This document shows positions 26,637 to 44,898 of a stretch of DNA of 64,000 nt, one piece after another. The position numbers and the translations under genes were made by a program. Location of the stretch: sequence record PV654397.1. One strand, written 5' to 3'. Under the pieces are notes generated by a model. The model was given only the letters and a program-made list of their open reading frames with translations. It was not told the DNA's origin and searched no databases. Position 1 is the stretch's first letter. Every line of letters starts with the position of its first letter.

Positions 26637-26644
26637 TATAAATA
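26637..26644 (+). promoter_or_regulatory. T4-type late promoter
   Basis: Exact TATAAATA (T4 gp55 consensus) upstream of the first MLPF gene. Confidence 0.65.
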
Positions 26645-26671
26645 TGATATAATGAATAAAGGAGAAGAAAT

Positions 26672-27820
26672 ATGTTACCTTTTGTTAGAATGTTTGATTA
26701 TGGGAATGAAGCACCTACCAACTCTGGGCGTTTTAAAATATATTCCAGTGATTCTATGTATCTTCATGATACTTATACTGACAAGTTGTATGCATCTTCT
26801 GCGACGAATTGGGGTACTGGTACAGGTGTAGCATCGAGTAAATTTATTCTTTGTGCGGAGAATGTTAAACGAGTTCTATTGGAAGATAACAGTAGTGATT
26901 GTCAATTGTATGAAGAGAAAGGTACTGGAAAAGTTTTTATCACTGGTAACACGAAGGCATTCACTGGTGTAACTGATAGAAAAACTTTGTGGACGGACTG
27001 TACTACGTGGATAACATCAAGTGGTATTAATGTTTCTGATATAAAATACATGAGTAGTTTTTATGATATGAAGGTGAATTTGATAACAAACGATGGTACA
27101 TTGTATTGTTGTGGAGCTAACAATATATCGAACATATCATCATTTGGTGATGGCACAAACATTAATTCTTTTAACACATTCAAAAGAGTAGATACTATAA
27201 CTTCGGTTAAAAAGGCAGTTGGTAACATTTATTTGCGAGAAGATAATACTTTATGGGGTTGTGGTTTTAACTATTACTACCAGTTGGGCACGGGTAATCA
27301 AACTTCTATTACTGGGGTGACGATGATTTCTTCGGATGTTATAGATTTTAATGTAAGTTATCAGAGTACATTTTTTATCAAATCGGATAATAATTTGTAC
27401 GCTTGTGGTAAACAGTTCGGTGCACAATATGGGAACGAATTTGGTACAGGTGGTACTTCCTCTTCTACTGATATACAATATAAAACTCCCACATTATTGA
27501 GTGCAGGTGTTTATAGTTTATATACTTGTGTTGGTAACATGGCATCACATATAGTTAAAGGTGATGAAGTACTTTATGCATCTGGAAGCAACTCGTCTGG
27601 TCAATTAGGTGTTGGTAATAATAATAATCAGTACTCCTATACTCCTTCATATACTTCGTTTAATACCTCTTGTAATTTGGTACGCACCCCATCTGGTTCA
27701 CTTATACTTACTGATACTGGAAAATTATATTATTGTGGCCTTGCAATAGTAGTAATGGGTGGTATTTCTGGACAGAACGTTCTTAATTATACAGAAGTCG
27801 ATATGTCATTTTTGCAGTAA
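26672..27820 (+). CDS. MLPF-tag RCC1/BLIP-II-like beta-propeller protein 1
   Basis: MLPFVRMFDYGN; repeats such as LWGCGFNYYYQLGTG and LYASGSNSSGQLGVG. Confidence 0.85.
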   Translation: MLPFVRMFDYGNEAPTNSGRFKIYSSDSMYLHDTYTDKLYASSATNWGTGTGVASSKFILCAENVKRVLLEDNSSDCQLYEEKGTGKVFITGNTKAFTGVTDRKTLWTDCTTWITSSGINVSDIKYMSSFYDMKVNLITNDGTLYCCGANNISNISSFGDGTNINSFNTFKRVDTITSVKKAVGNIYLREDNTLWGCGFNYYYQLGTGNQTSITGVTMISSDVIDFNVSYQSTFFIKSDNNLYACGKQFGAQYGNEFGTGGTSSSTDIQYKTPTLLSAGVYSLYTCVGNMASHIVKGDEVLYASGSNSSGQLGVGNNNNQYSYTPSYTSFNTSCNLVRTPSGSLILTDTGKLYYCGLAIVVMGGISGQNVLNYTEVDMSFLQ

Positions 27821-27828
27821 ATTAATAT

Positions 27829-27887
27829 GCCAGTACTTGATACTGGCTTTTTTGATTAAATATAGTATAATGAATAAAGGAGGAAAT
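27829..27887 (+). repeat. conserved intergenic cassette (GCCAGTAC hairpin terminator, ATTAAATATAGTATAAT, AAAGGAGG RBS); further copies from 29004, 31441, 32654, 33917, 34727, 35936 and 40647, variant at 30254, terminator only at 43015
   Basis: Near-identical ~65-bp sequence read before eight MLPF genes. Confidence 0.85.
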
Positions 27888-28997
27888 ATGTTACCTTTTG
27901 TAAGAATGGTTAAGTACGGGAATATTGCACCAGTACCGAAAAAAATAAAGAAAGTTATAGCAGGATATGATAATTTATATGTACTATATGGTGATGGTTC
28001 GCTATATGGTTGTGGAATCAATAACTATCAACAGTTAAATATTGATGGAACTGCTACACAAAATAATTGGGTACTAATTACCAATGGTGTTAGTAATGCA
28101 TGGGCTGGTGGATACAATATTTTATATTTGAAAGAAGATAAATTTATAATGCACGGAACTAATGTCTCATTAGGTTTAGGAAATACTACAATTCCATTAG
28201 GTGGAGTAGATGTAACTTCTTCATTCCCAGATATCTCTAATATTAAAATGATATCCATTGGTTTTGATTCAATGCACTATGTTAGTGCTGATGGTACAAC
28301 TGTATATGGAAGAGGTATGAACACAAATGGTTCTGTTGGTTCAGGTAGTACTTACTCACAGAGTACTTTCACTTCAGTACTGAATAATGGAACTAATCAG
28401 GTTATTGATATATTTGGTAACGTTAATAATACAGTGCTTCTAACATCGAATGGTGAGCTTCGAGCATGTGGGACAAGTGCTTATGGTTCTATAGGAAATG
28501 AAACTGGTAAGTGGACATCGTTTGGTTTAAAATTATCTGGCACTAAAATAATGGGTGGTAATGGGTATAGTACGCTTGCATATACAAATTCGGGAATGTA
28601 CCACTCAGGGTGGCAGTTAAATGGGGAACTAGGAAATGGTTTAGATACTAACGTACAGGTATATCCATTTCAATTTAACTCTAAAACGATAGATAGCAAG
28701 ATAGATAAAATTGCCAAATCATCATCTGGGTCATATGTTAACATGTACTCAACAACAGAAGGAAAGATATATACGACAGGTTCGTTTGGTAAAAACGGGT
28801 CAACTACTGCATTGAATTTGTTCACCAATACATTAACACTTATAAATTACAATCCAGATACCGCCTCGTTGTATACGTGCACAAACTTCAGTGTTGTGTA
28901 TGATGGTAATGAAACTATTGCTGTAAGTGGTAGTCCTACATATGTACCAGGGGGCGTTGCCGCTAATAGATGGACTACAATTCCATTACCCAAGTAA
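27888..28997 (+). CDS. MLPF-tag RCC1-like protein 2
   Basis: Start trimmed from 27759; MLPFVRMVKYGN; LYGCGINNYQQL repeats. Confidence 0.85.
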   Translation: MLPFVRMVKYGNIAPVPKKIKKVIAGYDNLYVLYGDGSLYGCGINNYQQLNIDGTATQNNWVLITNGVSNAWAGGYNILYLKEDKFIMHGTNVSLGLGNTTIPLGGVDVTSSFPDISNIKMISIGFDSMHYVSADGTTVYGRGMNTNGSVGSGSTYSQSTFTSVLNNGTNQVIDIFGNVNNTVLLTSNGELRACGTSAYGSIGNETGKWTSFGLKLSGTKIMGGNGYSTLAYTNSGMYHSGWQLNGELGNGLDTNVQVYPFQFNSKTIDSKIDKIAKSSSGSYVNMYSTTEGKIYTTGSFGKNGSTTALNLFTNTLTLINYNPDTASLYTCTNFSVVYDGNETIAVSGSPTYVPGGVAANRWTTIPLPK

Positions 28998-29068
28998 TAC
29001 TATGCCAGTACTTGATGCTGGCATTTCTTTTTGTATTAAATATAGTATAATGTATAAAGGAGGAAAAT

Positions 29069-30250
29069 ATGTTACCTTTTGTTAGAATGTTTGATTATGG
29101 GAACGTCGTTGAGCCACCTGTGGGTACACGTTATACCTGTAGTGACTATAGTGCGACTTATAGTTTAATAAAGGATGGTGTGTTATATGTATCTGGGATG
29201 AATAACTATTATCAGTTAGGTAATAACACTAACGTAACACGTTACAACGAGTGGTTAAAAGTTCCAGAGACTGATAGTGTTAAGTTTTGTAGTACTGGTT
29301 ATAGTCAGACAATGTATCTGACTAACAATGGTAGGATAATGATAGCAGGGGAAGATCCTACTTTCGGTGCGACGGCGGTGAGTGTAAAGGTTTGGACTGA
29401 TATAACTTCTAGATTTAGTGCAGTTGATACTAAAAAGATTGTTTATATTTCAATAGAACGCTTTGGTGTAATGATGATCATGGAAGATGGTTCAGTATGG
29501 GCGTGTGGTGTTGATAATACTGGTTGGAGTGGACAAGGGAGTAAGACTGTTGGTTTCTTTACTTTCAGACAAATATACACCGGAAGTGCAGGAAGTGCAG
29601 TTGCTTGTACTGCTGGTACTGGTACTGCGAGAATTCTGTTAGCTAATGGAACAATCTTGTCCTCTGGTACTAATACATATCATCAATGTAATGCTAGTAC
29701 TAATCCGTCTGTTCTAACATTCACTGAATCATTCCCTGGGGTTGATCCTTCATTGATATATCAAATCAAGATGTGTAATAACAACTGTATTATATTTTTG
29801 AGTGATAAGAGATATTACGGTACTGGCTGGGGAAGTTTTGGTGCATTGGGTGATGGTGATATTACGGGTTCGAATAATAAATTCTATGCAGGTACATTGT
29901 CAGTTGCTCCTAAAAACATGCGTGCTTATATGTCGTATCTATGTAGTTCTTCTGGGGATTCTAGTATGTACATAGGCGATGATAATTTCATATACACCTG
30001 CGGTTATCGTGGGAGGAACTTAATAAATGCCACTACAGATATTGGTACGTTCACGAAATGCATTCAAAGTGCACAAGGATACAAGAATGGACTTATATAT
30101 AGTGGGAATTATTGTGCTGTAGTTTTTGATCCAGATTTGGGTACAGGAATGACTTATGCGGTTTCATCACCAAAATTGAATTCTCCAGCACCACAGGCTA
30201 GTGTTCCAGCATTGGGTATGAGTTCGTTACAATCTATCATTTTACCATAA
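29069..30250 (+). CDS. MLPF-tag RCC1-like protein 3
   Basis: MLPFVRMFDYGN; LYVSGMNNYYQLGN. Confidence 0.85.
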   Translation: MLPFVRMFDYGNVVEPPVGTRYTCSDYSATYSLIKDGVLYVSGMNNYYQLGNNTNVTRYNEWLKVPETDSVKFCSTGYSQTMYLTNNGRIMIAGEDPTFGATAVSVKVWTDITSRFSAVDTKKIVYISIERFGVMMIMEDGSVWACGVDNTGWSGQGSKTVGFFTFRQIYTGSAGSAVACTAGTGTARILLANGTILSSGTNTYHQCNASTNPSVLTFTESFPGVDPSLIYQIKMCNNNCIIFLSDKRYYGTGWGSFGALGDGDITGSNNKFYAGTLSVAPKNMRAYMSYLCSSSGDSSMYIGDDNFIYTCGYRGRNLINATTDIGTFTKCIQSAQGYKNGLIYSGNYCAVVFDPDLGTGMTYAVSSPKLNSPAPQASVPALGMSSLQSIILP

Positions 30251-30324
30251 ATGATACCAGTACTGAAATACGTACTGGTATTTTTTTGTAAATACATTAT
30301 AATTATTATATGGAGATTTTAGTT

Positions 30325-31434
30325 ATGTTACCTTTTGTTAGAATGTTTGATTATGGGAATATCACACCTGGTCCTAAAAATATAATTAAAGTTGGTGCTT
30401 CTACACAGGGTCAATTCTTATTGACTGATTCACATGATTTATATTACATAGGAAGAAATCAAGGTGGTGAATCTGGAAATGGTAATACCAACACGGTATC
30501 TTCATGGATATTAGTAAGTGCAAATGTTTCTAATTTTTTCGTGGGTGATCGTGCACTTGTTATTATTAAAAATGATAATACGATATGGACATCAGGTCAA
30601 ACGTACTGGTTCACATCTTCTACAACTACTTCTTACAGTACTACATTAGTTGATAGAACCAGTTGGTTCACAAATGCAATACCAGTAAGTGAAATTGCTA
30701 ATATTGTATGTTCAAATGGTGTAATATTTGTACTTAGTTCTAGTTCAGTACTATATGGTGCAGGATATAATGGATACCGTGGTGCATTAGGTATTGGTTC
30801 ATCATCAATTTATACATTAACTCAATGTGCTACTAACGTACGTAAAGTAATGACAACGGGAAATGATAGCATATATATTAGTACTGACAATAGGTTATAT
30901 AGTTCTGGCTGGAATGATAGTGGTCAACATGGAACAAACAACCGAGTTCAGGTTAATACATGGGCGGCTAGAGCGAGTGGGGTTATTGATGCTACGGTAG
31001 GTGGTACTAATATAATGTATTACAATGGTACGCGTTATAATACCTGTGGATATGCCCCTAATTTCTATGGTTCTACTGTACAATTAATGACGGGTATTCC
31101 TGATGCGACTCTACCTAATATTGCTCCTTTATACATGACTAATACAATGAATTCTAGCTCTGCTGCTATGATGATAATAACTCCATCCTACCAGAAAGGT
31201 GTAGGTGGGGTTCGTGGTTTAGGATTAGGTGGCGACCAGAGAGGTGTGGAAAATACAGCAGTTAATTTGGATTTGAAAGTTCCGTTGAGTTCGATTAAAG
31301 ACATTGTTTTTAGTGATGGTTTAACTTCAATATTAACAAAAGACGGAGATGTATATAGTACTGGATCGTATTACGCCATTCCTGGAGCAAGCGAGGATGT
31401 TGCAGTCTTTACTAAAATTGATTTACCAAAATAA
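30325..31434 (+). CDS. MLPF-tag RCC1-like protein 4
   Basis: Start trimmed from 30310; LYGAGYNGYRGALGIG. Confidence 0.85.
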   Translation: MLPFVRMFDYGNITPGPKNIIKVGASTQGQFLLTDSHDLYYIGRNQGGESGNGNTNTVSSWILVSANVSNFFVGDRALVIIKNDNTIWTSGQTYWFTSSTTTSYSTTLVDRTSWFTNAIPVSEIANIVCSNGVIFVLSSSSVLYGAGYNGYRGALGIGSSSIYTLTQCATNVRKVMTTGNDSIYISTDNRLYSSGWNDSGQHGTNNRVQVNTWAARASGVIDATVGGTNIMYYNGTRYNTCGYAPNFYGSTVQLMTGIPDATLPNIAPLYMTNTMNSSSAAMMIITPSYQKGVGGVRGLGLGGDQRGVENTAVNLDLKVPLSSIKDIVFSDGLTSILTKDGDVYSTGSYYAIPGASEDVAVFTKIDLPK

Positions 31435-31504
31435 CATAATGCCAGTACTTGAGTACTGGCATTCTTTTTGATTAAATATAGTATAATGAATAAAGGAGGG
31501 AATT

Positions 31505-32647
31505 ATGTTACCTTTTGCAAGAATGGTTAAGTACGGGAATATTGCACCAGTTCCTGTAGTTCCTACAATAAAAGATTTTAAGATCGGCTTTTCACATGAA
31601 GTATTATTGGACAGTGCAGGTGATGTATGGGGTATTGGATACAATACAGATGGGCAGTTGGGTTTTTTGGATGCAAATACCAATTCACTAGGTGCATGGT
31701 CTAAGATATATACTGATGTTCGATTAATTGGAGTTACTGCTAGATATACAGTGGTAGTTACTAATAATAATAGAATACTATACGCAGGAAATAACTTAAT
31801 TTCTAGTACTACTACTCTTGGGTGGACCGATATAACTGCCAGTATGGGTCCGGTTGCAGTGGATAGCATCGATGCATTATATTGTACAGAGGGTATGATG
31901 CATATTAAAACTTCAGATGGTTCTTTATATGCATATGGTCGTAACATGAACGCAAACAGTGGTGTTACTGGTGGTGTTATTAGTGTTGCAACTAAGGTTA
32001 ATTTGCCTTCTGCTGTAAATGACATGCGATATACGTTTAGTTATGGTTCAGTACTATGTCGATTGGATACGACTTCTATATACGCATGGGGACGAAACAC
32101 AAATGGTGAATTAGGTCAGGGTAATGCAACAGCCATTGTTACTCCAAAACTATTGTCTGGTTCTTCTATTGCAATGGGTACTTCGTATAATGCTACTGCA
32201 ATTGTTTCTGGTTCTGCATCGTTAGTTACGTGTGGTGGTCAGAATAGTGGTCAGTTGGGTAATGGTATTACTACTGATGGTAATGTATACACCTTTGGTG
32301 TCAGGACATACCCAGGCGATCTTAATACAATAAGAAGTCCAGTGGATTGCAGTACAACTTACACCTCTGCATTTATGAGTCCAGATGGTATATATTACAC
32401 TGGTGCTAACCGAAGTATGTTTGGTGGTATTAGTGGTGCTTCTACCGTTGCTGTATATACTAAATGTAGTGATTTACCAATAACATATTCTAATATAATT
32501 CAGTGGAGTAGTGGTACTATAGGTGGTGCTATATGTAGTAGTACAGAGTTATACCAATGTGGTATAGGTAGATACATTGCTGGTGATGGTGCGAGCACAA
32601 CCAGGTATGGATTTAGGAAGACACCATTACCTTGGGATACTTATTGA
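31505..32647 (+). CDS. MLPF-tag RCC1-like protein 5
   Basis: MLPFARMVKYGN; IYAWGRNTNGELGQG. Confidence 0.85.
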   Translation: MLPFARMVKYGNIAPVPVVPTIKDFKIGFSHEVLLDSAGDVWGIGYNTDGQLGFLDANTNSLGAWSKIYTDVRLIGVTARYTVVVTNNNRILYAGNNLISSTTTLGWTDITASMGPVAVDSIDALYCTEGMMHIKTSDGSLYAYGRNMNANSGVTGGVISVATKVNLPSAVNDMRYTFSYGSVLCRLDTTSIYAWGRNTNGELGQGNATAIVTPKLLSGSSIAMGTSYNATAIVSGSASLVTCGGQNSGQLGNGITTDGNVYTFGVRTYPGDLNTIRSPVDCSTTYTSAFMSPDGIYYTGANRSMFGGISGASTVAVYTKCSDLPITYSNIIQWSSGTIGGAICSSTELYQCGIGRYIAGDGASTTRYGFRKTPLPWDTY

Positions 32648-32718
32648 CATTACGCCAGTACTCTGTACTGGCTTTTCTTTTTGTATTAAATATAGTATAA
32701 TGAATAAAGGAGGGAATT

Positions 32719-33909
32719 ATGTTACCTTTTGTTAGAATGTTTGATTATGGGAATATCACACCTGAACCTCTTCAAATTAAGAAAATAATACCAACTGATA
32801 CTGAGGTTGTTGTACTTTATACCGACGGTCAACTATACGCACGAGGCAGTAATAGTTATGGGAAGTTTGGTAGAGGAAATAATAATGCAGTAAGGTCGTG
32901 GACATTAATTAGAGAAAATGTCAAAGATTGCTGGATGACACAAGGAACTTTGTTAGTACAAGATAATGACTTAAATTATTTTTATTGTGGATATGGTAGT
33001 CATATTGGTTTACCAACTAGTACTACTACGTTTTTAAGTTATAACCAATATATTGAAAATTTGTACACACAAAGTTCAAGTACTTCAATTAAACAGATGT
33101 ATGCAGGTACTACGTGGTTTACTTTCTTAATGGATAATAATACAATATGGAGTACAGGGTGGAATAGTGCTAGACAATTCGCAGATGGTACAGGAACTAC
33201 TTATCAAATATCAGATGGTTCATTTGTTAAAGCGGTAACACCAGATGTTGATATTGCACAAATAATGTCAACATATAACTGTGTAATGTTGTTTGATAAA
33301 CAAAATAATTTATATATTGGTGGTAGTACATCTGGCATAAGTACTAGTACCACATGGACACCATTTAATGAATATACTTTATATCAGCCAAGTACCACAT
33401 ATACAAAAACATTACAATATACTGTTTGTTCATTTGGTGCTGTCAGTGCTTTAGTAGAGAATCCAAGTACAGGAGCACGTCAGTTTCTAGTTGGTGGATT
33501 AGCTAATAATGGAGCATGGGGAAATAAAACTACATCTAGCACTGTTAATGGAGTTTTAGGAAATAATAGTGCTACATTACCACCCGGTACTTTGTATTCA
33601 ATTCATACTGGATACCCAGCACAATCTAGTATACTAGTTACGAGTGCAGGTGTATATGCAACTGGTTTAAATGCGAGTAGTTATGCTGGCACATTGGGTG
33701 TTGGTTATGATGCTACCATTGGTAAATTTACTGCATGTCCATTGCCGTCAGAAATAACATATTCTATGTATGATAAAATAAAAATATATCGCGGTTCGTT
33801 GCGTACTTTCCTAACTGCTGATATGAAAAATATATATTCAACCGGAACTTATGATGATGGTGGTCCTAGTACAAATAGATATGTTCTGGATACACCTAGA
33901 CAATTGTAA
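32719..33909 (+). CDS. MLPF-tag RCC1-like protein 6
   Basis: LYARGSNSYGKFGRG. Confidence 0.85.
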   Translation: MLPFVRMFDYGNITPEPLQIKKIIPTDTEVVVLYTDGQLYARGSNSYGKFGRGNNNAVRSWTLIRENVKDCWMTQGTLLVQDNDLNYFYCGYGSHIGLPTSTTTFLSYNQYIENLYTQSSSTSIKQMYAGTTWFTFLMDNNTIWSTGWNSARQFADGTGTTYQISDGSFVKAVTPDVDIAQIMSTYNCVMLFDKQNNLYIGGSTSGISTSTTWTPFNEYTLYQPSTTYTKTLQYTVCSFGAVSALVENPSTGARQFLVGGLANNGAWGNKTTSSTVNGVLGNNSATLPPGTLYSIHTGYPAQSSILVTSAGVYATGLNASSYAGTLGVGYDATIGKFTACPLPSEITYSMYDKIKIYRGSLRTFLTADMKNIYSTGTYDDGGPSTNRYVLDTPRQL

Positions 33910-33981
33910 TGTAAAAGCCAGTACTTGATACTGGCTTTTCTTTTTGTATTAAATATAGTATAATGAATAAAGGAGGGAAAT

Positions 33982-34719: not shown

Positions 34720-34791
34720 AATATAGGCCAGTACTTGATACTGGCTTTTCTTTTTGTATTAAATATATTATATTGAATAAAGGAGGAAAAT

Positions 34792-37185: not shown

Positions 37186-38304
37186 ATGTTACCTTTTGCA
37201 AGAATGGTTAAGTACGGGAATGTAAGAGAAGTTACGAAAATACGTAAAATGGTCACGGACGGAACTAGTGGAATTTTATTCCTAACAACAAGTGGTAAAT
37301 TATATGCTGCGGGACCAAATACAAATGGTAAGTTTGGTGATGTTACTACATCGGCTGATAAGTGGACTTTGATATATGAAAATGTTGATGACTTTTACTA
37401 TTCACCTACGTGGACATTTTTAAAACTCAAAGACGGTCAGTATATGTGCAGCGGTGAAACTACTGCATTTGGTTATCCAACAAGTAATATATTTGTTAAT
37501 TGTAGTTCGATTTTTAATGCAGTAACTGGTACAATAATTGATGTTCAAGTTAATGCGTTACGTAACTGTATAGGGGTACTGACAAACTTAGGAGAATTGT
37601 GGTTCATTGGTACGAATACGCAATATATATTTGGAATGAGCACACCAAGTAGTAGTACATCTTTTGTTAAAAATACGATAGTCAGTGATGTCAAGTCATT
37701 CAAATTAATGTATGCAAACGTATGGGCATTAACTAATTCTGGTGTTCTTTATGGTTCTGGAAACCCAAACGCTAATCAAATACCTAGTTCCACTGGGTTT
37801 ACCCAAATTGCAACAGGGGTTTTGGGTTATTCAGCAACAGTTGCTGTTGTAGTGCTTAATACAGCTAGTGGTGTATTTGCCAGAGGAAACGTCAACAATA
37901 AATATGGAACATCAGTGTCTGGTTCAACTGCAACTTTAGTTTCTTGTTCGTTACCATTCACATATAATGCAGCTACATTTGCATTTCCTAAAATCGTTTA
38001 TAATAGTAGTTCGGTTGCAGCAAAAATAATAATCCAGAATGGAACCGATTATTATGTGTCAGCAGTTTCCGATAATTATGGGTTTACCAGTACAAATGCA
38101 AGTTTTACACCTGGACCGGTTCCAGCATTTACTAAGATGATCAATGCACCAACTTCAATAGAGCCTATATTCTTTGACAGTACATATTCATCATATTATA
38201 TAGAAAATGACATATGTTATGTTACAGGTAGATTGTTCCCAATACCTAGCTACACTACATCAGATAAAGCATTAATATATACTGAAGAAAAAATAGTAAT
38301 ATAG
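37186..38304 (+). CDS. MLPF-tag RCC1-like protein 9
   Basis: LYAAGPNTNGKFG; directly coupled to the previous gene. Confidence 0.85.
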   Translation: MLPFARMVKYGNVREVTKIRKMVTDGTSGILFLTTSGKLYAAGPNTNGKFGDVTTSADKWTLIYENVDDFYYSPTWTFLKLKDGQYMCSGETTAFGYPTSNIFVNCSSIFNAVTGTIIDVQVNALRNCIGVLTNLGELWFIGTNTQYIFGMSTPSSSTSFVKNTIVSDVKSFKLMYANVWALTNSGVLYGSGNPNANQIPSSTGFTQIATGVLGYSATVAVVVLNTASGVFARGNVNNKYGTSVSGSTATLVSCSLPFTYNAATFAFPKIVYNSSSVAAKIIIQNGTDYYVSAVSDNYGFTSTNASFTPGPVPAFTKMINAPTSIEPIFFDSTYSSYYIENDICYVTGRLFPIPSYTTSDKALIYTEEKIVI

Positions 38305-38316: not shown

Positions 38317-39465
38317 ATGTTACCTTTTGTTAGAATGTTTGATTATGGAAATGAAGCACCAGCATTACCAAAAATAAAGAAATTGTCAACTGGATACCAA
38401 CATACTATGCTTTTAACGCAGAATGGCGATTTATATGCTAAGGGTAGTAATGCAGCAGGACAGCTAGGTACTGGTAATACAACAGCAGCGAGGGAATGGA
38501 TATTAGTTAATAGTTCAGTTGCTGATGTTTATTGCTCTGCTAACGGTACATTGATTAAAAAGAATGATGAATCATGGTGGAGTTCTGGTTCCGGTGCAGC
38601 AGCAGGTGTCAATTCAGTTGTGAATACATGGACCAATGTGAGTGCACAAATCAATAGTATGCTTACTTCTCTCCCTGGTTCCTTTATTAAACAATTTGTA
38701 TCCTCGTTTTATAGCTCAATGGCTATACGTTCGGATGACACAGTTTGGGTAATTGGGCAAAACAACAATGGTGAAATTACTGGAACTACTGCAAAATATA
38801 ATACATGTGTGAATATAACCTCTAGTTTCCCCAGTACACCAGTAAAAATCTATGGTAGTGAGAACTGTATGGCTTATACTGACAGTACTGGTGCATTTTA
38901 TTATAGTGGTCAAATGGTCGGTGGGAATGCTGGTGGTTCAGCAAATGCAACAACATTTACTAGATATAATGTTGGTTTGAGTACAAATAAAATAATAGAC
39001 TTTAATACTACTGGCTATGGTTCATTCTTTATTATAGAAACTACTGCTGGAGTTAAACAGGTATACGCTGGTGGTTACCAACGATATGGTCAATTGGGTG
39101 ATGGTGGCACTACAACAACAATACTTGCTCCTGCACAAATAACAACACCTAACTCTAATTTAATTAAATTGTTTAAAGGTACGTCAATGTACAATCAGCA
39201 TTTAATAACCAAATCTGGTATATATGCAACTGGTCAAAACTCCCAATCACAATACAATGGTACTTTGGGTATTGGTTCAAACATTGATGCTACTACATAT
39301 ACACTGGCACAAATATCATTATCATCATATGATGATATTGAAATACATACAACATTGGATAGAACATTCTTATGGGCAGGTGATTATGTTTATAGTACAG
39401 GTTTAAATTCTACATATTCATCAATCACTAGCAACTCATATGTGTTGGATATGCCATCAATATAA
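38317..39465 (+). CDS. MLPF-tag RCC1-like protein 10
   Basis: LYAKGSNAAGQLGTG. Confidence 0.85.
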   Translation: MLPFVRMFDYGNEAPALPKIKKLSTGYQHTMLLTQNGDLYAKGSNAAGQLGTGNTTAAREWILVNSSVADVYCSANGTLIKKNDESWWSSGSGAAAGVNSVVNTWTNVSAQINSMLTSLPGSFIKQFVSSFYSSMAIRSDDTVWVIGQNNNGEITGTTAKYNTCVNITSSFPSTPVKIYGSENCMAYTDSTGAFYYSGQMVGGNAGGSANATTFTRYNVGLSTNKIIDFNTTGYGSFFIIETTAGVKQVYAGGYQRYGQLGDGGTTTTILAPAQITTPNSNLIKLFKGTSMYNQHLITKSGIYATGQNSQSQYNGTLGIGSNIDATTYTLAQISLSSYDDIEIHTTLDRTFLWAGDYVYSTGLNSTYSSITSNSYVLDMPSI

Positions 39466-39479: not shown

Positions 39480-40640
39480 ATGTTACCTTTTGTTAGAATG
39501 TTTGATTACGGAAACATTGCACCATCCCCTGCTGCCATTAAAAAATTAGTTGCAGGGTATAACTGGGTTATGGTATTGGGTAGTAATGGTAAATTATATA
39601 CCCGTGGTTCCAATTCAAGTGGTCAGTTGGGTTTAGGAGACAATACAACCAGAACATCATGGACAGTAACTGCATCGGATGTCATTGATGTATGGTGTGG
39701 TCAGTATGCTACAATGATTCACAAATCAGATGGTACATATCAATACACAGGGCGACAATACAATGTGTGTATGGGTACATCATCTGTTAATGCATGGACT
39801 TCTATGCAAACTCTTATTAATCAAGTTAATTCCCAAGGAACAATTTCAGAAATATCACTAGGGAATAACTTCATTTCAATACTTATGAGTAATGGGACAA
39901 TTTGGAGTGGTGGTTATAACACAGGAGGGCAGCTTGGCAATGCTTCTTATTCTAACAGTTTTACTACATTAGTAAAATCAATTATACCAAGTGGTGCGGT
40001 TCCGAAAAGGATTATTGCAGGTATAAACATGTGTTCATTTATTGCCGAAAGTGGTAGACTATATTACACAGGTGAAGTTAATGGTGATACTAACAGTACT
40101 TCAACCGTGAGTTTTTATAATGTATTCGCATTATCAGATAGATTACCAGCAACTGTTAGTACTATAGCATTTATAAGTACTGTTAATGGTATGGTTCAAG
40201 GTATTGCTAGAAACAATAGTACGTCTGTTGTTACTGTGTATACTGGTGGTGACCAATCATATGGACAGGCTGCTACTAATACAGCAGCATCAACCAGCAT
40301 ATTGACAACTGTTGTGGCAAATCAACCACAAGGAAATATATTAGATATAGGATATGGGTACGGATATTACTCGAACTTTGTTATTACTGATACTGGCGTA
40401 TACGTTGCTGGTAATAACTCTGCAACTTCATACTATGGACAATTAAGTACAGGTTCAACTACTAACGTATTAACTTACACTAAATCTATTACTCCTGATT
40501 TGAATTTCAAAGATGTTAAAATCCAAAGTTGCTATGGTAAAACATATATGACAGATGGAAACAAAATATATTCAAGTGGTACTAACCTAGTATCTGGTGG
40601 TACTGCTAGTACTGTATTTGTTGAAGATTCACCAATTTAA
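39480..40640 (+). CDS. MLPF-tag RCC1-like protein 11
   Basis: LYTRGSNSSGQLGLG. Confidence 0.85.
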   Translation: MLPFVRMFDYGNIAPSPAAIKKLVAGYNWVMVLGSNGKLYTRGSNSSGQLGLGDNTTRTSWTVTASDVIDVWCGQYATMIHKSDGTYQYTGRQYNVCMGTSSVNAWTSMQTLINQVNSQGTISEISLGNNFISILMSNGTIWSGGYNTGGQLGNASYSNSFTTLVKSIIPSGAVPKRIIAGINMCSFIAESGRLYYTGEVNGDTNSTSTVSFYNVFALSDRLPATVSTIAFISTVNGMVQGIARNNSTSVVTVYTGGDQSYGQAATNTAASTSILTTVVANQPQGNILDIGYGYGYYSNFVITDTGVYVAGNNSATSYYGQLSTGSTTNVLTYTKSITPDLNFKDVKIQSCYGKTYMTDGNKIYSSGTNLVSGGTASTVFVEDSPI

Positions 40641-40710
40641 AATAATGCCAGTACTCTGTACTGGCTTTTCTTTTTGATTAAATATAGTATAAAGAATAAA
40701 GGAGGGAATT

Positions 40711-41856
40711 ATGTTACCTTTTGTTAGAATGTTTGATTACGGAAATGAAGTGCAGCCATTGCCAGGTATTAAAAAGATTGTTGCACGAGGTATATATTGT
40801 ATGGTACTACTTGATAGTGGGGATTTATACATAAGAGGTCAAAACTTAGGTAGTACGTTTGGTAATGGTTCAGCCACTAATACTATATATACTGGTGATT
40901 GGGTTTTAAGTACAACTGGAATAAAAAATATATGGAGTAATTCAGGTACTACGATTTGTACAACATTTGACAACCGAGTTCTTTCAAGTGGATCTATTCG
41001 TGGCTTAACTGGAAGTTCAGCATCATCAACTACCACATTCACTGACAGAACAACTACTTTTATTAATGCTGGTTTAAATCCAGAACAAATCGTTGATGTT
41101 GCTCTAAATGGATATGATATTTTCGCACTAGCGGCATCTGGAGAAGTTTACAGTGGAGGTATTAACTATTCAGGCCAACATGGAAGTACTGGAGCACGAG
41201 CATTCCAATTAAACACAGTATACACGAATGCCAAAAAAATTTCCCTAAGTCCAGAACAAGCGGGTACTTTTTGGTATTTGGATACTTCAAATGATTTTTA
41301 CGGGTGTGGAAATGGAAGTGTTGGTCAGATATTAGGAACTACAACAGTGAGTTCCAAAAAATTAATAAGTTCTGATGTAATTGATTTTACTGCTAATATT
41401 AATTGTTTCTTTATTTCTAAATCTGATGGTTTATATTGTGCAGGTTCACAGTTTAATGGTCAACTTGGGAATGGAGTTAGAAGTAACAATATTGGTGAAG
41501 TTGGTAGAACAACTTTATATAAACTCCCAAATTTCTCGTCAGCACCTAGTTACATTTTTAACGATACATACTTAACTGTTGTCCTTTATGAAAACAAATG
41601 GTATTGTACAGGTTCAACAAGCAAATCTGGAGCCGGAATTAATAATAGTAGCAGTAGTTTTATTGTTAATAATACAATTATACCTGACAATTCAAATCCA
41701 AGATATGCAATTAATAATGACAATAGTTATGTTGTATCTAAATCTGGGTTATTATATGGTACAGGAATATATTCAAGCTCAACAGATCTATTACCAGGTT
41801 ACTCAACATCACAATATGAATATGTGTTATTGAGTACTAAGGGTATGAATAATTAA
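40711..41856 (+). CDS. MLPF-tag RCC1-like protein 12
   Basis: LYCAGSQFNGQLGNG. Confidence 0.85.
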   Translation: MLPFVRMFDYGNEVQPLPGIKKIVARGIYCMVLLDSGDLYIRGQNLGSTFGNGSATNTIYTGDWVLSTTGIKNIWSNSGTTICTTFDNRVLSSGSIRGLTGSSASSTTTFTDRTTTFINAGLNPEQIVDVALNGYDIFALAASGEVYSGGINYSGQHGSTGARAFQLNTVYTNAKKISLSPEQAGTFWYLDTSNDFYGCGNGSVGQILGTTTVSSKKLISSDVIDFTANINCFFISKSDGLYCAGSQFNGQLGNGVRSNNIGEVGRTTLYKLPNFSSAPSYIFNDTYLTVVLYENKWYCTGSTSKSGAGINNSSSSFIVNNTIIPDNSNPRYAINNDNSYVVSKSGLLYGTGIYSSSTDLLPGYSTSQYEYVLLSTKGMNN

Positions 41857-41871
41857 TAAAGGAGAAAAAGA

Positions 41872-43008
41872 ATGTTACCTTTTGCAAGAATGGTTAAGTA
41901 CGGGAATATAAAAGTAAAGAGTACTATCCAAAAAGTTATCCTTGGTGGTGGTGGTCAATGTGTGGTAACATTACTCAGTGATGGTAGAGTGTATGGACGT
42001 GGATACAATACAACATATGGGTTGGGTACTGGTACAACAACATTCGTAAGTGATTGGGTATTAATGGGCGATAATATTGTTGATATCCATTCAAATGGTG
42101 TTACTGGCACATTCCTTATTACCAAAGAAAATAGAATTTTGTATTCTGGTTTTGCGACACCAATCAATGGCACAACATCACATTATACACGTTTCACTGA
42201 TTTAACATCAACTGTATTTGCTGCGGTGGATGTTAGTAATATTAAAACAATTACGGGAAATGGTAATGTTACAATGGTTCTTTTGAATGATGGTTCACTT
42301 TATGGGAGTGGTGCAAATACAGGGGTTATAGGTAATGGTAGTAACGTTGCATTATCAACACAAACATATGTGACTAATGATGTGCGTGATGTGAAAACAT
42401 ATCCATCAATGAACACTATAACAAAAAATAATAATCAAATATTGGCTAGTGGTATTTTATACCAAGGCGTGAACGGTACAAATTCATCAATAAACACGTC
42501 TTCATATACATTACTGTACACATTACCGAGTTCTGATTGTTTTCAATTTGCATTTGATACATATACATTTGGATATGTTGACCCTAGTACTAACACTTCT
42601 TATATAAGAGGTATACCAATAAATGGTTCATTAGGTAATGGCGTTACTAATAATACAGCAGTTACAACATGGGTTACTAAAGTTTGGAATACACCAATTG
42701 ATAGTTCTATACCTAATAAATCATATACAACTAACCATGTCTCCTTGTTCAATGATGGAAACTTATGGACAACTGGTGCATCTAGTGTAGGTTATTCCAA
42801 TGGTACAAATAGCACAACAGCTAATACATGGACCAGTTCATCTAATTTACCATTCAACACTAATAACATAACAGACTATGCTTTTGGTGGTAGTATTACT
42901 GTAGTGGTAATCGACTACAGGACTATGTACATACTAGCTAACAACGCCATTGCTGGTACTGCTACGACAACTTATAAATTTGAGCCATATAATTCTCCAC
43001 CAGTTTAA
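41872..43008 (+). CDS. MLPF-tag RCC1-like protein 13
   Basis: VYGRGYNTTYGLGTG. Confidence 0.85.
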   Translation: MLPFARMVKYGNIKVKSTIQKVILGGGGQCVVTLLSDGRVYGRGYNTTYGLGTGTTTFVSDWVLMGDNIVDIHSNGVTGTFLITKENRILYSGFATPINGTTSHYTRFTDLTSTVFAAVDVSNIKTITGNGNVTMVLLNDGSLYGSGANTGVIGNGSNVALSTQTYVTNDVRDVKTYPSMNTITKNNNQILASGILYQGVNGTNSSINTSSYTLLYTLPSSDCFQFAFDTYTFGYVDPSTNTSYIRGIPINGSLGNGVTNNTAVTTWVTKVWNTPIDSSIPNKSYTTNHVSLFNDGNLWTTGASSVGYSNGTNSTTANTWTSSSNLPFNTNNITDYAFGGSITVVVIDYRTMYILANNAIAGTATTTYKFEPYNSPPV

Positions 43009-43040
43009 TATAATGCCAGTACTATGTACTGGCTTTTCTT

Positions 43041-43691
43041 TTACATATTATATAATGTGAATGCAGTTACTTTACCAGTTGTTGTTAGTTCATTATAAAG
43101 ATACTCCAAGATTCTCGCACACTCTAAGTATATCTCGATATCATCATGAATAAGTGAGTACTGAAATAGCTGTTCTTCAGATAATTTGTATTGACTTCCT
43201 TTTAATGAATTGAGAATATCTTTCACATCATCAAGTACTGGGTAAAGTACGAAATCTTCATCATATTTTGAAGCAATAAATTCAAATCCACCACCATCAG
43301 TACTAGATATACCAATCAGTACTTTATCAATCAAGTTAATGTTTATATAACGGTTGTGATTTGGGTGAATTGAAATCTCAAACATACGAGTACTGTTACA
43401 ATCAACATCAATATACAAATATACATCGTTGAATTTATAAGTTAAGCAACCGTACTCAAGAAAATCAGAGCAAATAATTGATGAGTTTTTTCTCGTCTCT
43501 GCGTAATGCATCTTGATATTCTTTTCACGCATAAGTAATTCGAACTTTGCACTAAACTTGCCACCAGCAAGATAGTTAGTATTAGGACGTTTGTAACTTG
43601 CAACTGGTCGGTGGGATGATGTAAAGTATTTTTTTGTGAATCGTTTATGTTTAGTGAAATATTCTTGATAGAACTTACTTCTTTTATTCAT
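43041..43691 (-). CDS. hypothetical protein (216 aa) with LSEEQLFQYS motif, inserted antisense in the MLPF array
   Basis: GAGGT SD; motif shared with 23907-24566. Confidence 0.75.
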   Translation of the reverse strand: MNKRSKFYQEYFTKHKRFTKKYFTSSHRPVASYKRPNTNYLAGGKFSAKFELLMREKNIKMHYAETRKNSSIICSDFLEYGCLTYKFNDVYLYIDVDCNSTRMFEISIHPNHNRYININLIDKVLIGISSTDGGGFEFIASKYDEDFVLYPVLDDVKDILNSLKGSQYKLSEEQLFQYSLIHDDIEIYLECARILEYLYNELTTTGKVTAFTLYNM

Positions 43692-43768
43692 GAGTACCTC
43701 AATTAAATCGCTGTAAAATTGTACATTATAAAATGATTAAATAAAGTATAACACAAGGAGATTTTATC

Positions 43769-44893
43769 ATGTTACCTTTCGTATTGTTATTTGATTATGG
43801 GAACGAAAAACAAGAAAGTTCTTATGATGTTAGTGTATATGGAAACAATAACTACATTTTAAATAAACAAACTGGAAACCTTTTTGCATCCGGTGCTGCG
43901 GCATTCATGGGTGATAACACAGTTAAGTATTATATTACCCAAATAGAATCAAATGTTCATAGCTGTGAGATAGGTTTCCTATCATCATGGATAATTAAGA
44001 AGGACAAAACTGTTTTCATTTTAGGAAACAAAAGCAGTATAGGATTAACTGGTTCGACAACATCATGGTTCGAAATTACAAATTTATTTTCTGCTGTTCC
44101 TGAAATATGGGACAACCTATTTGAATGTAAAGTTCAATTGGGATATAACTGTATACGTGTTATGACACCACTAGGATCAATCTATGCGATTGGTACAAAC
44201 ACTTATGGTGCATTGGGTACTGGTACTACATCCTCATCAACTTCGTTCGTTAAAAGTGGTGCTGTGGATGCTGTACGCATGGAATCAACAGAACGTTCAG
44301 TGTTCTATCAAAACAGTTATGGACAATGGTTTGGATGTGGTGATAACACATATGGTATACTAGGTCTAGGAACTACCGCTAGTCGTGTAAACTCATACAC
44401 CGCACCAGTATGGACTAATGCAGAAGCTGTTAGCTTCTCTAACCGTGGGATCATATACAGCCTCAATGGTACTCTATACTCATGTGGTGACAAAGTTAAT
44501 GGTCAGCTAGGGGATGGATATACACAAAGCATAGACGCAGCCAGGAGCACACCATACACCATAGGAACCGCATTCCAAATTGGTAAGGCAATAACATCAG
44601 CTACACAAGCATCAGCCAACGTATTCATTGGTAAAGATAATAAGTTCTATGGTACTGGTAGTATTGCTGCTGGTATAAATGGTAGTACTAGTGCTGCATT
44701 AAGTAAAGTTACTGCGTTATCAGCAGCACTACCACCTGACATTACATACAATGATATTATAACATTCAATACAGGGACCGTAACTTTTATTCAAGCAAAA
44801 GGACAACTATATTATGTTGGTAGAAGAACTTACATAGATAATAGTTCAGACGTTACCACACAGTTCAGTGTAATTGGTGGCTTAGATAATTAA
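43769..44893 (+). CDS. MLPF-tag RCC1-like protein 14 (diverged tag MLPFVLLFDYGN)
   Basis: IYAIGTNTYGALGTG, WFGCGDNTYGILGLG. Confidence 0.85.
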   Translation: MLPFVLLFDYGNEKQESSYDVSVYGNNNYILNKQTGNLFASGAAAFMGDNTVKYYITQIESNVHSCEIGFLSSWIIKKDKTVFILGNKSSIGLTGSTTSWFEITNLFSAVPEIWDNLFECKVQLGYNCIRVMTPLGSIYAIGTNTYGALGTGTTSSSTSFVKSGAVDAVRMESTERSVFYQNSYGQWFGCGDNTYGILGLGTTASRVNSYTAPVWTNAEAVSFSNRGIIYSLNGTLYSCGDKVNGQLGDGYTQSIDAARSTPYTIGTAFQIGKAITSATQASANVFIGKDNKFYGTGSIAAGINGSTSAALSKVTALSAALPPDITYNDIITFNTGTVTFIQAKGQLYYVGRRTYIDNSSDVTTQFSVIGGLDN

Positions 44894-44898
44894 AATTA

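What the first reader, a model, noticed from the sequence alone, without database searches (positions are those of the whole stretch)
26637..44893. Array of 15 late genes sharing a 12-aa N-terminal tag on highly divergent RCC1-like propellers: candidate modular virion display system
Seen: 15 co-oriented genes over 18 kb all start MLPF[VA][RL][MIL][FV][DK]YGN and diverge strongly right after it. Fourteen are ~370-395-aa G/S/T/N-rich proteins with RCC1/BLIP-II repeats (LY..G.N..GQLG.G). The first has an exact TATAAATA late promoter and others have ATTAAATA or TGTAAATA variants. Established: beta-propellers are common ligand-binding scaffolds, and some related jumbo phages (CBB, phAPEC6) show hair-like virion appendages. 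Inference: the tag is a docking or assembly peptide that loads interchangeable propeller heads onto a shared virion site, giving a multi-receptor or defence-decoy repertoire. A head-packaging tag for injected effectors is the alternative.
Basis: partly seen in the sequence, partly recalled or inferred. Interest (0 to 1): 0.86.

Follow-up and report, generated by a model that had tools for sequence, protein, structure and literature searches.

The report
Shared N-terminal tag on virion proteins
Fifteen neighbouring genes of a giant E. coli phage all begin with the same 12-amino-acid peptide in front of very different binding domains; the same peptide marks proteins found in purified particles of related giant phages, so it is most likely an address label that loads interchangeable binding modules onto the virus particle.

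Summary
The window is Escherichia phage WPEC5 (Asteriusvirus). Fifteen co-oriented genes (26672-44893) start with the 12-residue peptide. Fourteen are RCC1-like seven-bladed propellers that are only about 20% identical to each other. One is a glycine-rich protein of another fold.

The RCC1 paralogue array and its presence in virions were already published for 121Q, PBECO4, phAPEC6 and GAP32, under the misleading name "DNA condensation protein". The tag itself was not mentioned in the papers I read.

- It heads Kelch propellers, ConA/LamG-like lectin folds, RCC1-Kelch fusions and other small beta-rich domains.
- It occurs in CBB, GAP32, Serratia BF, Salmonella SE_PL and uncultured ~350-370-kb contigs, sometimes at unlinked loci.
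- Tagged proteins were detected in virion mass spectrometry for 8/10 in CBB, 8/11 in phAPEC6 and 3/4 in GAP32.
- AlphaFold models place the tag outside the folded domain in two different folds.
- Synonymous codon variation shows that selection acts on the protein.

Best reading: a portable virion-incorporation peptide for late-expressed accessory binding modules, probably displayed on the surface. Whether the proteins sit outside or inside the particle, what the peptide docks to, and any link to the "hairs" remain unproven.

The parts
26566..26671 (+). Leader cassette of g1: TATAAATA (26637-26644), TATAAT (26648-26653) and a Shine-Dalgarno site, 27 nt from the motif to the ATG
26672..27820 (+). 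g1, 382 aa, tag MLPFVRMFDYGN plus an RCC1-like propeller
   Evidence: 96% body identity to a 121Q gene that carries the other tag variant
27821..27887 (+). Cassette: terminator hairpin 27829-27847 with T-run, ATTAAATA 27855-27862, TATAAT, Shine-Dalgarno site
27888..28997 (+). g2, 369 aa, tag MLPFVRMVKYGN (mixed variant) plus an RCC1-like propeller
28998..29068 (+). Cassette: terminator 29002-29024, ATTAAATA 29035-29042
29069..30250 (+). g3, 393 aa, tag plus an RCC1-like propeller; no close orthologue in 121Q or phAPEC6
30251..30324 (+). Cassette: terminator 30253-30282, TGTAAATA 30287-30294
30325..31434 (+). g4, 369 aa, tag plus an RCC1-like propeller
   Evidence: orthologue in 121Q/phAPEC6 has 76% body identity and a different tag variant
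31435..31504 (+). Cassette: terminator 31438-31463, ATTAAATA 31471-31478
31505..32647 (+). g5, 380 aa, tag MLPFARMVKYGN plus an RCC1-like propeller
32648..32718 (+). Cassette: terminator 32654-32672, ATTAAATA 32685-32692
32719..33909 (+). g6, 396 aa, tag plus an RCC1-like propeller
33910..33981 (+). Cassette: terminator 33913-33939, ATTAAATA 33948-33955
33982..34719 (+). g7, 245 aa, tag MLPFARIVKYGN plus a glycine-rich domain (phrog_4474; relatives carry Pfam Gly_rich_2); not a propeller
   Evidence: AF2 pLDDT 92.8 with residues 4-10 below 50
34720..34791 (+). Cassette: terminator 34725-34747, ATTAAATA 34758-34765
34792..35922 (+). g8, 376 aa, tag plus an RCC1-like propeller
35923..36000 (+). 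Cassette: terminator 35936-35954, ATTAAATA 35967-35974
36001..37176 (+). g9, 391 aa, tag plus an RCC1-like propeller; first gene of the apparent operon g9-g12
37186..38304 (+). g10, 372 aa, tag plus a divergent RCC1-like propeller (below the curated repeat cut-off)
38317..39465 (+). g11, 382 aa, tag plus an RCC1-like propeller
39480..40640 (+). g12, 386 aa, tag plus an RCC1-like propeller; the modelled member
   Evidence: AF2 pLDDT 88.9, pTM 0.88, residues 1-7 below 50 and residues 1-19 without secondary structure; TM 0.8 to UVR8
40641..40710 (+). Cassette: terminator 40647-40665, ATTAAATA 40677-40684
40711..41856 (+). g13, 381 aa, tag plus an RCC1-like propeller
41872..43008 (+). g14, 378 aa, tag plus a divergent RCC1-like propeller
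43015..43033 (+). Terminator hairpin after g14 (it also reads as a hairpin on the minus strand)
43736..43743 (+). ATTAAATA upstream of g15, 25 nt before the ATG
43769..44893 (+). g15, 374 aa, tag variant MLPFVLLFDYGN plus an RCC1-like propeller; no counterpart at this position in phAPEC6
44898..44924 (+). Terminator hairpin after g15

Best explanation
The 12-residue N-terminus is a portable virion-incorporation (docking) peptide used by the RaK2-related jumbo phages examined here (Asteriusvirus, Mimasvirus, the Serratia BF group, Salmonella SE_PL and uncultured relatives). The WPEC5 array is a late-expressed repertoire of accessory binding modules that carry it.

Proposed sequence of events, with each step marked as shown or inferred:
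1. Late in infection the phage's T4 gp55-like sigma factor reads TAAATA-core promoters in front of each cassette. Most cassettes are insulated by their own terminator. The motif and the terminators are shown; the timing is inferred.
2. Each product is a flexible 12-residue peptide, then a short and usually proline-containing linker, then a compact beta-rich domain. The domain is an RCC1 or Kelch propeller, a ConA/LamG-like fold or a Gly-rich domain. This is shown by sequence and AF2.
3. The peptide docks into one common acceptor site on a structural protein, so all heads compete for the same sites and each particle carries a mixture. This is inferred. What is shown is that tagged proteins of different folds, encoded at unlinked loci, are found in purified virions.
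4. The heads sit on the outside, on fibre or hair tips or as capsid or tail decoration, and give weak multivalent adhesion to varied surface glycans or proteins. This is inferred from the fold types, the near-neutral composition, and RCC1 domains that occur in tail-fibre proteins and tail modules of other phages.
5. The conserved block of about 110 nt (terminator, promoter, Shine-Dalgarno site and tag) doubles as a homology arm. Recombination there lets heads and tag variants be exchanged. Exchange is shown: orthologous bodies carry different tag variants, and array content differs between isolates.
For: Tag existence and portability:
- WPEC5 has 15 of 15 array genes tagged, covering two folds.
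- CBB has ten tagged genes at three loci: CBB_247, 536, 537 and 548-554. They cover Kelch, Laminin_G_3 and unknown folds.
- GAP32_001, 002, 530 and 531 are tagged, as are genes of Serratia BF and Salmonella SE_PL.
- Uncultured 355-371-kb contigs carry tagged genes, including a 667-aa RCC1+Kelch fusion.

Selection at the protein level: residues that stay the same use 2-4 synonymous codons (Pro 4, Gly 4, Tyr 2, Phe 2, Asn 2). Positions 5 and 9 vary freely.

The tag lies outside the fold:
- AF2 gives pLDDT below 50 for residues 1-7 of g12 and 4-10 of g7, while the bodies score 89-93.
- Profile matches to solved RCC1 structures start at positions 13-37, never in the tag.
- Homologues of the g7 body in other phages carry a different N-terminus.

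Virion association (published mass spectrometry):
- phAPEC6 gp003, 005, 006, 007, 009, 010, 549 and 551 were detected. For gp003-gp010 the molecular weights match the tagged GenBank genes.
- CBB_247, 536, 537, 548, 549, 551, 552 and 553 were detected.
- GAP32_001, 530 and 531 were detected.
- Enrichment over other proteins gives p = 2e-6 and 2e-7.
- Five of the six MS-detected CBB proteins that GAP32 lacks are tagged.

Late expression:
- The same TAAATA-core motif precedes MS-verified structural genes in phAPEC6.
- It also precedes the annotated virion structural gene in this window, there too behind a terminator.
- TATAAATA is depleted in the window (3 against 12.8 +/- 3.7 expected), and all three copies lie 27-45 nt before a start codon.
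- The CBB paper reports an ATAAATA late motif and a gp55-like sigma factor.

External binding role:
- pI is 5.1-8.2 and K+R only 5-6.6%.
- RCC1-like domains occur in long tail-fibre proteins (BFVD hits).
- phrog_11922 'tail protein' is among the matches.
- The RCC1-like protein CR9 gp033 lies beside the tail-fibre genes.
- The best, though weak, structural match of g7 is a cyanophage Pam3 fibre.
- CBB hairs end in tiny globular structures.

Exchange:
- g1, g4 and g6 have orthologues with 76-96% body identity but another tag variant.
- 8 of the 15 heads have no close orthologue in the 121Q and phAPEC6 arrays.
- Tag copy number is 4-15 per Asteriusvirus genome.
Against: - No experiment or model shows the peptide bound to anything, and no acceptor was identified. 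Pfam finds nothing in the large phAPEC6 structural proteins I tried.
- Mass spectrometry of purified particles cannot separate outside from inside. Peptide counts are low (1-8 unique peptides per protein).
- The phAPEC6 authors proposed an inner-body role.
- The WPEC5 array lies far from the tail module, among small early-looking genes on the opposite strand.
- The heads are compact monomer-like domains, not fibres.
- Two tagged CBB Kelch proteins (550, 554), GAP32_002 and 3 of the 11 phAPEC6 paralogues were not detected.
- The ATTAAATA cassettes also contain a perfect TATAAT, so the promoter class is not settled by sequence alone.
- Within Asteriusvirus the 5' block is clearly homogenised by recombination. 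Part of the within-genome identity is therefore concerted evolution.
- Variability of the array between isolates is not much greater than that of the neighbouring 8 kb.
Confidence: 0.5

Rival explanations
1. Head-internal cargo. The peptide is a capsid-targeting signal of the T4 internal-protein type. It brings the proteins into the prohead core, where they form or decorate the inner body seen in phAPEC6, or are ejected with the DNA.
For: - The peptide is short, N-terminal, portable and present on unrelated proteins found in virions.
- phAPEC6 has an inner body of unknown composition, and its authors nominated the RCC1-like proteins for it.
- The phages encode a T4-type prohead core scaffold and protease.
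- In the other genera, position 9 is Glu in 5 of 17 tags, preceded by Leu, Ile or Met two residues earlier.
Against: - None of the 15 WPEC5 tags has Glu at position 9; it is Asp (8) or Lys (7). Over all genera that position is free (E, K, D, Q, S, T, N, L, A). There is therefore no conserved T4-type cleavage site; the site definition is from my own knowledge.
- The proteins are near neutral and poor in charged residues. Their folds are typical extracellular binding modules, not enzymes or DNA binders.
- Number and kind of heads vary from 4 to 15 between close relatives, which is odd for a core architectural body.
- A rigid 40-kDa propeller would have to unfold to pass through the tail tube (inference).
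Confidence: 0.2
2. Assembly or chaperone handle. The peptide is recognised by a phage-encoded folding or assembly factor that matures these beta-rich proteins. It is not itself the contact with the virion, and incorporation depends on the bodies.
For: - The tag is flexible and exposed.
- It is conserved on many all-beta folds that may fold slowly.
- Clp-type ATPase and protease genes and a tail-fibre assembly protein exist in these genomes.
Against: - Bodies as different as propellers, lectin folds and a Gly-rich domain would each need their own virion contact.
- Homologues of the same bodies in other phage lineages do without this peptide and carry another short N-terminus. That fits a lineage-specific address better than a folding need.
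Confidence: 0.12
3. No protein-level function. The identical starts are only a by-product of tandem duplication plus gene conversion of the promoter, RBS and start region, or of an RNA-level signal such as a translational operator.
For: - Within WPEC5 the conserved block extends about 75 nt upstream of the ATG and is nearly identical at the DNA level.
- Tag variants are exchanged between orthologues.
Against: - Genes g10, g11, g12 and g14 lack the upstream cassette but keep the tag.
- The tag persists across genera while codons change at synonymous sites and the upstream DNA differs.
- It is present on unlinked genes on the other strand in CBB (247, 536, 537).
- It correlates with detection in virions.
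Confidence: 0.05
4. The database annotation is right: these are regulators of chromosome condensation that organise the packaged or the host DNA.
For: The RCC1-like fold is real. The name is repeated in most records.
Against: - The name comes from a eukaryotic Ran exchange factor (own knowledge), and bacteria have no Ran.
- The proteins are not basic.
- The same tag and the same virion association hold for Kelch, lectin-like and Gly-rich bodies with no link to DNA.
Confidence: 0.03

Closest known systems
RCC1-like 'DNA condensation protein' paralogue arrays of 121Q, PBECO4, phAPEC6 and GAP32 gp001 (PMC5259590, PMC7247149)
   Same: This is the same gene family and the same locus. The multi-copy array and its detection in virions by mass spectrometry are published.
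   Different: The papers I read treat the proteins as RCC1 paralogues and possible DNA organisers. They do not mention the shared 12-residue N-terminus. They also do not connect these proteins with the Kelch, LamG and other structural proteins of CBB and GAP32 that carry it. The CBB supplement lists only 536~537 and 549~553 as paralogues.
T4 capsid-targeting sequence of internal proteins (IPI-III, Alt); own knowledge
   Same: A short, portable N-terminal peptide shared by unrelated proteins. It determines incorporation into the particle of a T4-related myovirus.
   Different: The T4 signal ends at a prohead-protease site (Leu/Ile-x-Glu) and is removed, and the cargo is internal and ejected. 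Here there is no conserved Glu. The bodies look like extracellular binding modules, and processing is unknown.
Conserved N-terminal anchor peptides or domains of multi-RBP phages (second depolymerase of KP34-type Klebsiella phages, SP6/K1-5, CBA120/G7C branched spikes); own knowledge
   Same: A conserved N-terminal attachment element is followed by an exchangeable, fast-evolving binding head. Several heads share one virion attachment system, and recombination occurs at the boundary.
   Different: Those heads are trimeric fibres or spikes encoded in the tail module, and their anchor partners are known. Here the heads are compact propellers or lectin-like domains, up to 15 per genome and mostly outside the tail module. 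No partner is known.
Decoration proteins anchored by an N-terminal strand (lambda gpD type); own knowledge
   Same: A free N-terminal peptide that becomes ordered only on the particle is a known way to fix a globular protein on a capsid.
   Different: Those are single, abundant cement proteins with a stabilising role. They are not a diversified repertoire.
N-terminal packing signals of payloads of extracellular contractile injection systems (PVC type); own knowledge
   Same: An array of diverse proteins shares a disordered N-terminal leader that loads them into a phage-tail-like particle.
   Different: Those leaders are about 50 residues and their payloads are toxins or enzymes loaded into the tube. 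Here the tag is 12 residues and the bodies are non-enzymatic binding folds. A phage tube is occupied by the tape measure (inference).

Membership tests
RCC1-like domain (seven-bladed beta-propeller; Pfam PF00415/PF13540/PF25390) | RCC1 repeat models matched above the curated cut-off | tested here: met
   11 of the 14 propeller genes pass the RCC1 or RCC1_2 cut-off. g10, g13 and g14 are below the cut-off but match WD40_RLD at E of 1e-8 to 1e-18. g7 has no match.
RCC1-like domain (seven-bladed beta-propeller; Pfam PF00415/PF13540/PF25390) | Seven-bladed propeller architecture | tested here: met
   AF2 model of g12 has pLDDT 88.9. Foldseek gives TM 0.77-0.80 to UVR8, RPGR, HERC2 and RCC1. Profile against PDB gives E = 8e-69. 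Only one member was modelled.
Regulator of chromosome condensation in the functional sense (Ran exchange factor, chromatin binder) | Ran partner and basic chromatin- or DNA-binding surface | tested here: not met
   The hosts have no Ran (own knowledge). The proteins are near neutral: pI 5.1-8.2, net charge -5 to +2. Exchange activity cannot be tested with these tools.
T4-type capsid-targeting sequence | Short portable N-terminal peptide on unrelated virion proteins | tested here: met
   virion mass spectrometry
T4-type capsid-targeting sequence | Peptide ends in a prohead-protease site (Leu/Ile-x-Glu) and is cleaved off | tested here: not met
   Position 9 is Asp or Lys in all 15 WPEC5 genes. 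It is Glu in only 5 of 55 tags overall. No other Glu is fixed in residues 13-20. Actual processing was not tested.
T4-type capsid-targeting sequence | Cargo located inside the head | not testable with these tools
   The published mass spectrometry used whole particles.
N-terminal anchor of exchangeable receptor-binding proteins | Conserved N-terminus followed by divergent heads, with recombination at the boundary | tested here: met
   Tag identity 85% against body identity 20.5%. Tag variants are swapped between orthologues.
N-terminal anchor of exchangeable receptor-binding proteins | Genes lie in the tail-fibre module next to the anchor protein | tested here: not met
   The WPEC5 array is flanked by small hypothetical and membrane-protein genes. 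Only CBB_247 lies inside a structural module. A CR9 relative lies beside tail-fibre genes but lacks this tag.
N-terminal anchor of exchangeable receptor-binding proteins | Known acceptor and demonstrated binding to a host receptor | not testable with these tools
   No multimer prediction was available, and no acceptor was found.
Gly_rich_2 (PF21722) family, for g7 only | Match to the Pfam model | tested here: inconclusive
   g7 itself has no Pfam hit. Homologues at E of 1e-16 to 1e-6 carry PF21722, and P0076 passes the cut-off.

The most novel reading that the evidence does not exclude
RaK2-related jumbo phages have a lineage-wide 'address label' system. Any small beta-rich binding domain that acquires the 12-residue N-terminal peptide is loaded onto a common acceptor, for example the distal ends of the hair-like fibres or of a T4 gp34-like proximal fibre, whose terminal globules would be these heads. 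Each particle would then display a combinatorial, rapidly exchangeable adhesin set. The two tag variants seen in WPEC5 (...MFD... and ...MVK...) would address two acceptor alleles or sites.
Probability: 0.3. Interest if true: 0.85.

Novelty: new variant of a known kind. Interest (0 to 1): 0.66.

Why it matters
If the peptide is the incorporation signal, it explains three things at once. It explains why the odd "chromosome condensation", Kelch and lectin-like proteins of these giant phages turn up in virion proteomes. It gives a simple sequence rule for predicting accessory virion proteins in this group. It also corrects a widespread misannotation.

It would be a compact example of how a large virus diversifies what it displays without touching its core structure: one short address and many heads, exchanged at a conserved cassette boundary. 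It also makes the long-open question of what the hairs and decorations of CBB, 121Q and phAPEC6 carry directly testable by structure and proteomics.

Tried and rejected
1. Tag as the 'velcro' strand that closes the propeller: rejected. AF2 leaves residues 1-19 unstructured, PDB profile matches start after the tag, and a non-propeller carries it.
2. T4-like protease site: no conserved Glu.
3. RNA-level conservation: rejected by synonymous variation across genera.
4. Sigma-70 promoters: the consensus scan shows no enrichment, 81 found against 101 expected. Terminator-like sites are enriched, 26 against 8.2.
5. Hairs made of RCC1 propellers: CBB has hairs but no RCC1 homologue.
6. Array far more variable than its surroundings: the neighbouring 8.2 kb is also mosaic, with the best other genomes covering 44-56% against 20-48% for the array. 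I make no strong claim here.
7. A second RCC1 family with another shared N-terminus (P0017, P0025, P0031): the one contig examined has several RCC1 genes but no shared start.
8. Acceptor hunt: Pfam finds nothing in phAPEC6 gp240, gp245 (3323 aa), gp250c, gp253 or gp256.
9. g7 against solved structures: no sequence match. The only fold match is weak, to a cyanophage Pam3 fibre (TM 0.26, probability 0.89).
10. Literature searches found no description of the tag.
11. The rest of the WPEC5 genome (64-381 kb) was not scanned at the protein level. A 48-nt DNA probe finds 12 places in the record, which is compatible with the array being the only site. In 121Q all 11 pattern hits fall in two loci that were not placed on the contig; the gene under one of them is 121Q gene 248 of the published RCC1-like set.

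Declaration of a slip: early in my reasoning I wrote from memory a string of about ten letters that I believed to be the T4 IPIII targeting peptide.

Full report
**Identity of the window.** Bases 26600-34800 match Escherichia phage WPEC5 (PV654397.1) at 100% identity and at the same coordinates. The other matches are Asteriusvirus phages such as 121Q, PBECO4 and phAPEC6. GenBank annotates the array genes as "chromosome condensation regulator" or as hypothetical.

- Fifteen + strand genes between 26672 and 44893 start with the 12-residue peptide.
- A six-frame scan finds 15 hits in the window, all at those starts, and none in 300 shuffles.
- Fourteen products (369-396 aa) are RCC1-like. They share on average 20.5% identity outside the tag and 85% within it. 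The N-terminus is the best-conserved stretch of the alignment.
- The seventh gene encodes a 245-aa glycine-rich protein with no RCC1 repeats.

**Two tag variants occur.**
- The ...MFD... variant (g1's MLPFVRMFDYGN) is on g1, g3, g4, g6, g11, g12 and g13. g15 has a diverged form of it.
- The ...MVK... variant (g5's MLPFARMVKYGN) is on g5, g8, g9, g10 and g14. g7 has Ile at position 7.
- g2 is mixed.

**Anatomy of the cassettes.**
- Ten intergenic spacers of 67-106 nt, plus the end of the longer spacer before g15, share one layout: a GC-rich hairpin with a T-run, an 8-mer with a TAAATA core, TATAAT in most, a Shine-Dalgarno site, and the ATG 25-30 nt after the 8-mer.
- The 8-mer is TATAAATA for g1, TGTAAATA for g4 and ATTAAATA for the others.
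- Terminator-like sites are enriched, 26 against 8.2 +/- 3.5.
- g9-g12 and g13-g14 are packed without spacers and look operonic.
- Nine of the ten ATTAAATA copies in the window are in these cassettes.

**Is it a late promoter?**
- TATAAATA is depleted in the window (3 against 12.8 +/- 3.7). All three copies lie 27-45 nt before a start codon. One precedes the annotated virion structural protein (57646-59133, minus strand), again just behind a terminator hairpin.
- In phAPEC6, structural genes verified by mass spectrometry have TATAAATA, ATAAATA or only TAAATA about 35-37 nt before the ATG. One of them (gp250c) has the ATTAAATA form.
- The CBB paper reports an ATAAATA motif before structural genes and a gp55-like sigma factor.
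- Late expression is therefore a reasonable inference, not a measurement.

**The tag is not part of the fold.**
- The AF2 model of g12 is a confident propeller (pLDDT 88.9, pTM 0.88). Residues 1-7 score below 50, and there is no secondary structure before residue 20.
- It superposes on UVR8, RPGR, HERC2 and RCC1 at TM about 0.8. Profile matches to solved RCC1 proteins begin after the tag.
- The g7 model (pLDDT 92.8) likewise leaves residues 4-10 below 50.
- In 12 of 15 genes a proline follows within residues 13-19.
- Most homologues of the g7 body in other phages start with a different short N-terminus. The tag was therefore joined to that fold in this lineage.

**The tag goes far beyond this array.**
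- A degenerate DNA pattern scan of IMG/VR, followed by translation, finds the tag in 121Q, GAP32, CBB, Serratia phage BF and several uncultured contigs of 355-371 kb. Outside jumbo-sized contigs there are only chance-like hits.
- In CBB, all seven co-oriented genes CBB_548-554 carry it. They lie next to the same kind of membrane-protein array as in WPEC5. They comprise two Laminin_G_3 proteins, three Kelch propellers and two proteins of an unnamed fold of about 220 aa.
- Three more tagged CBB genes lie elsewhere: CBB_536 and 537 in opposite orientation to their neighbours, and CBB_247 inside the head/baseplate region.
- Salmonella phage SE_PL has the tag with Ile at position 2, on RCC1-like and other bodies.
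- One uncultured contig has a 667-aa tagged RCC1+Kelch fusion.
- GAP32_001, 002, 530 and 531 are tagged. GAP32_530 and 002 deviate at positions 10-12, and the start of 531 is split off by the linearisation of the record.

**Column shares over 55 tags from seven phages**:

| Position | Residues (count) |
|---|---|
| 1 | M 55 |
| 2 | L 49, I 6 |
| 3 | P 55 |
| 4 | F 55 |
| 5 | free |
| 6 | R 49 |
| 7-8 | hydrophobic in nearly all |
| 9 | free |
| 10 | Y 55 |
| 11 | G 53, A 2 |
| 12 | N 55 |

These tags were collected with a pattern that fixes positions 1-4 and 10-12, so that invariance is partly by construction. Nearly every co-oriented array gene I read carries the tag. The exception is SE_PL gp428, which starts without it directly after the 60-aa tagged gp427. 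Synonymous codons vary at the fixed residues, which places the constraint on the protein.

**Virion association (published data, not mine).**
- phAPEC6: eight RCC1-like proteins were detected among 62 virion proteins. For gp003, 005, 006, 007, 009 and 010 the molecular weights equal those of the tagged GenBank genes. Counting 8 of the 11 paralogues against 54 of the other 540 proteins gives p = 2e-6.
- CBB: 247, 536, 537, 548, 549, 551, 552 and 553 were detected among 55 virion proteins. Eight of 10 against 47 of 544 gives p = 2e-7. Five of the six MS-detected CBB proteins absent from GAP32 are tagged.
- GAP32: 001, 530 and 531 were detected.
- RaK2 has no listed homologue of any of these. I did not scan RaK2 itself.

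**What the heads look like.**
- They are near neutral and poor in charged residues, which does not fit DNA condensation.
- RCC1-like domains occur inside long tail-fibre proteins of other phages and match a PHROG family annotated 'tail protein'.
- In Cronobacter phage CR9 a 388-aa RCC1-like protein lies beside the tail-fibre genes.
- The best structural match of g7, though weak, is a cyanophage fibre.
- The CBB paper notes tiny globular structures at the ends of hairs and baseplate fibres. That is suggestive only.

**Turnover.**
- g1, g4 and g6 have orthologues in 121Q or phAPEC6 with 76-96% body identity but the other tag variant.
- Eight of the 15 heads have no close orthologue in those two arrays.
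- Tag copy number by a DNA probe is 4-15 per genome.
- The conserved 5' block is therefore a recombination boundary. The neighbouring 8 kb is also mosaic, so I do not claim exceptional variability.

**Interpretation.** The most economical reading is a portable virion-incorporation peptide on late-expressed accessory binding modules, probably surface-displayed (confidence 0.5). Head-internal targeting remains possible (0.2). A chaperone handle (0.12), pure concerted evolution (0.05) and the "DNA condensation" label (0.03) are less likely.

**Novelty.** The array and its virion association are known. The tag, its portability across folds and genera, and its value as a predictor of virion proteins were not described in the papers I could search.

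Noticed in passing
window 21965-26565 (minus strand): About twenty tandem small genes (57-75 aa) that look like one paralogue family, with similar starts and a similar hydrophobic C-terminal tail. A 219-aa gene at 23907-24566 interrupts them.
   Followed up: partly
window 44929-47368 (minus strand): Seven tandem genes for 104-123-aa proteins with several hydrophobic, membrane-span-like stretches. The same kind of array borders the tagged-gene array in CBB (CBB_543-547) and GAP32 (GAP32_525-528), so the neighbourhood is conserved across genera.
   Followed up: partly
window 43041-43691 (minus strand): A 216-aa gene of unknown function (phrog_34359) splits g14 from g15. In phAPEC6 a gene of about the same size (gp011c, 219 aa) sits on the same strand right after the last RCC1 gene, and no g15 equivalent follows it.
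   Followed up: partly
window 59179-59186 and 60421-60428 (minus strand): These are the only other two TATAAATA copies in the 64 kb. Both lie just upstream of gene starts, one before the annotated virion structural protein and behind a terminator hairpin. The octamer is about four-fold depleted in the window.
   Followed up: yes
L011 (Cronobacter phage CR9) 8995-9639; proteins P0043-P0070: In other phage lineages the homologues of the Gly-rich body and of the ~220-aa body start with a different short shared N-terminus (Met, any residue, Glu, then two or three hydrophobic residues). This hints that other large myoviruses use their own address peptide.
   Followed up: partly
L002 (phAPEC6 1-20000): The GenBank record leaves several tagged ORFs unannotated (starts 3, 2434, 6063, 7325). 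It starts gp002 upstream of its tag Met (annotated 3506, tag at 3614).
   Followed up: no
L009 (Salmonella phage SE_PL) 1803-2924: A 60-aa tagged ORF (gp427) is followed directly by a 305-aa RCC1-like ORF (gp428) that lacks the tag. The pair looks like one disrupted gene.
   Followed up: no
L045 / L044 (GAP32 record ends): The linear GAP32 record cuts GAP32_531 in two. Its tagged first 42 codons are at the start of the record and the rest is at the end, so the annotated protein begins internally.
   Followed up: yes
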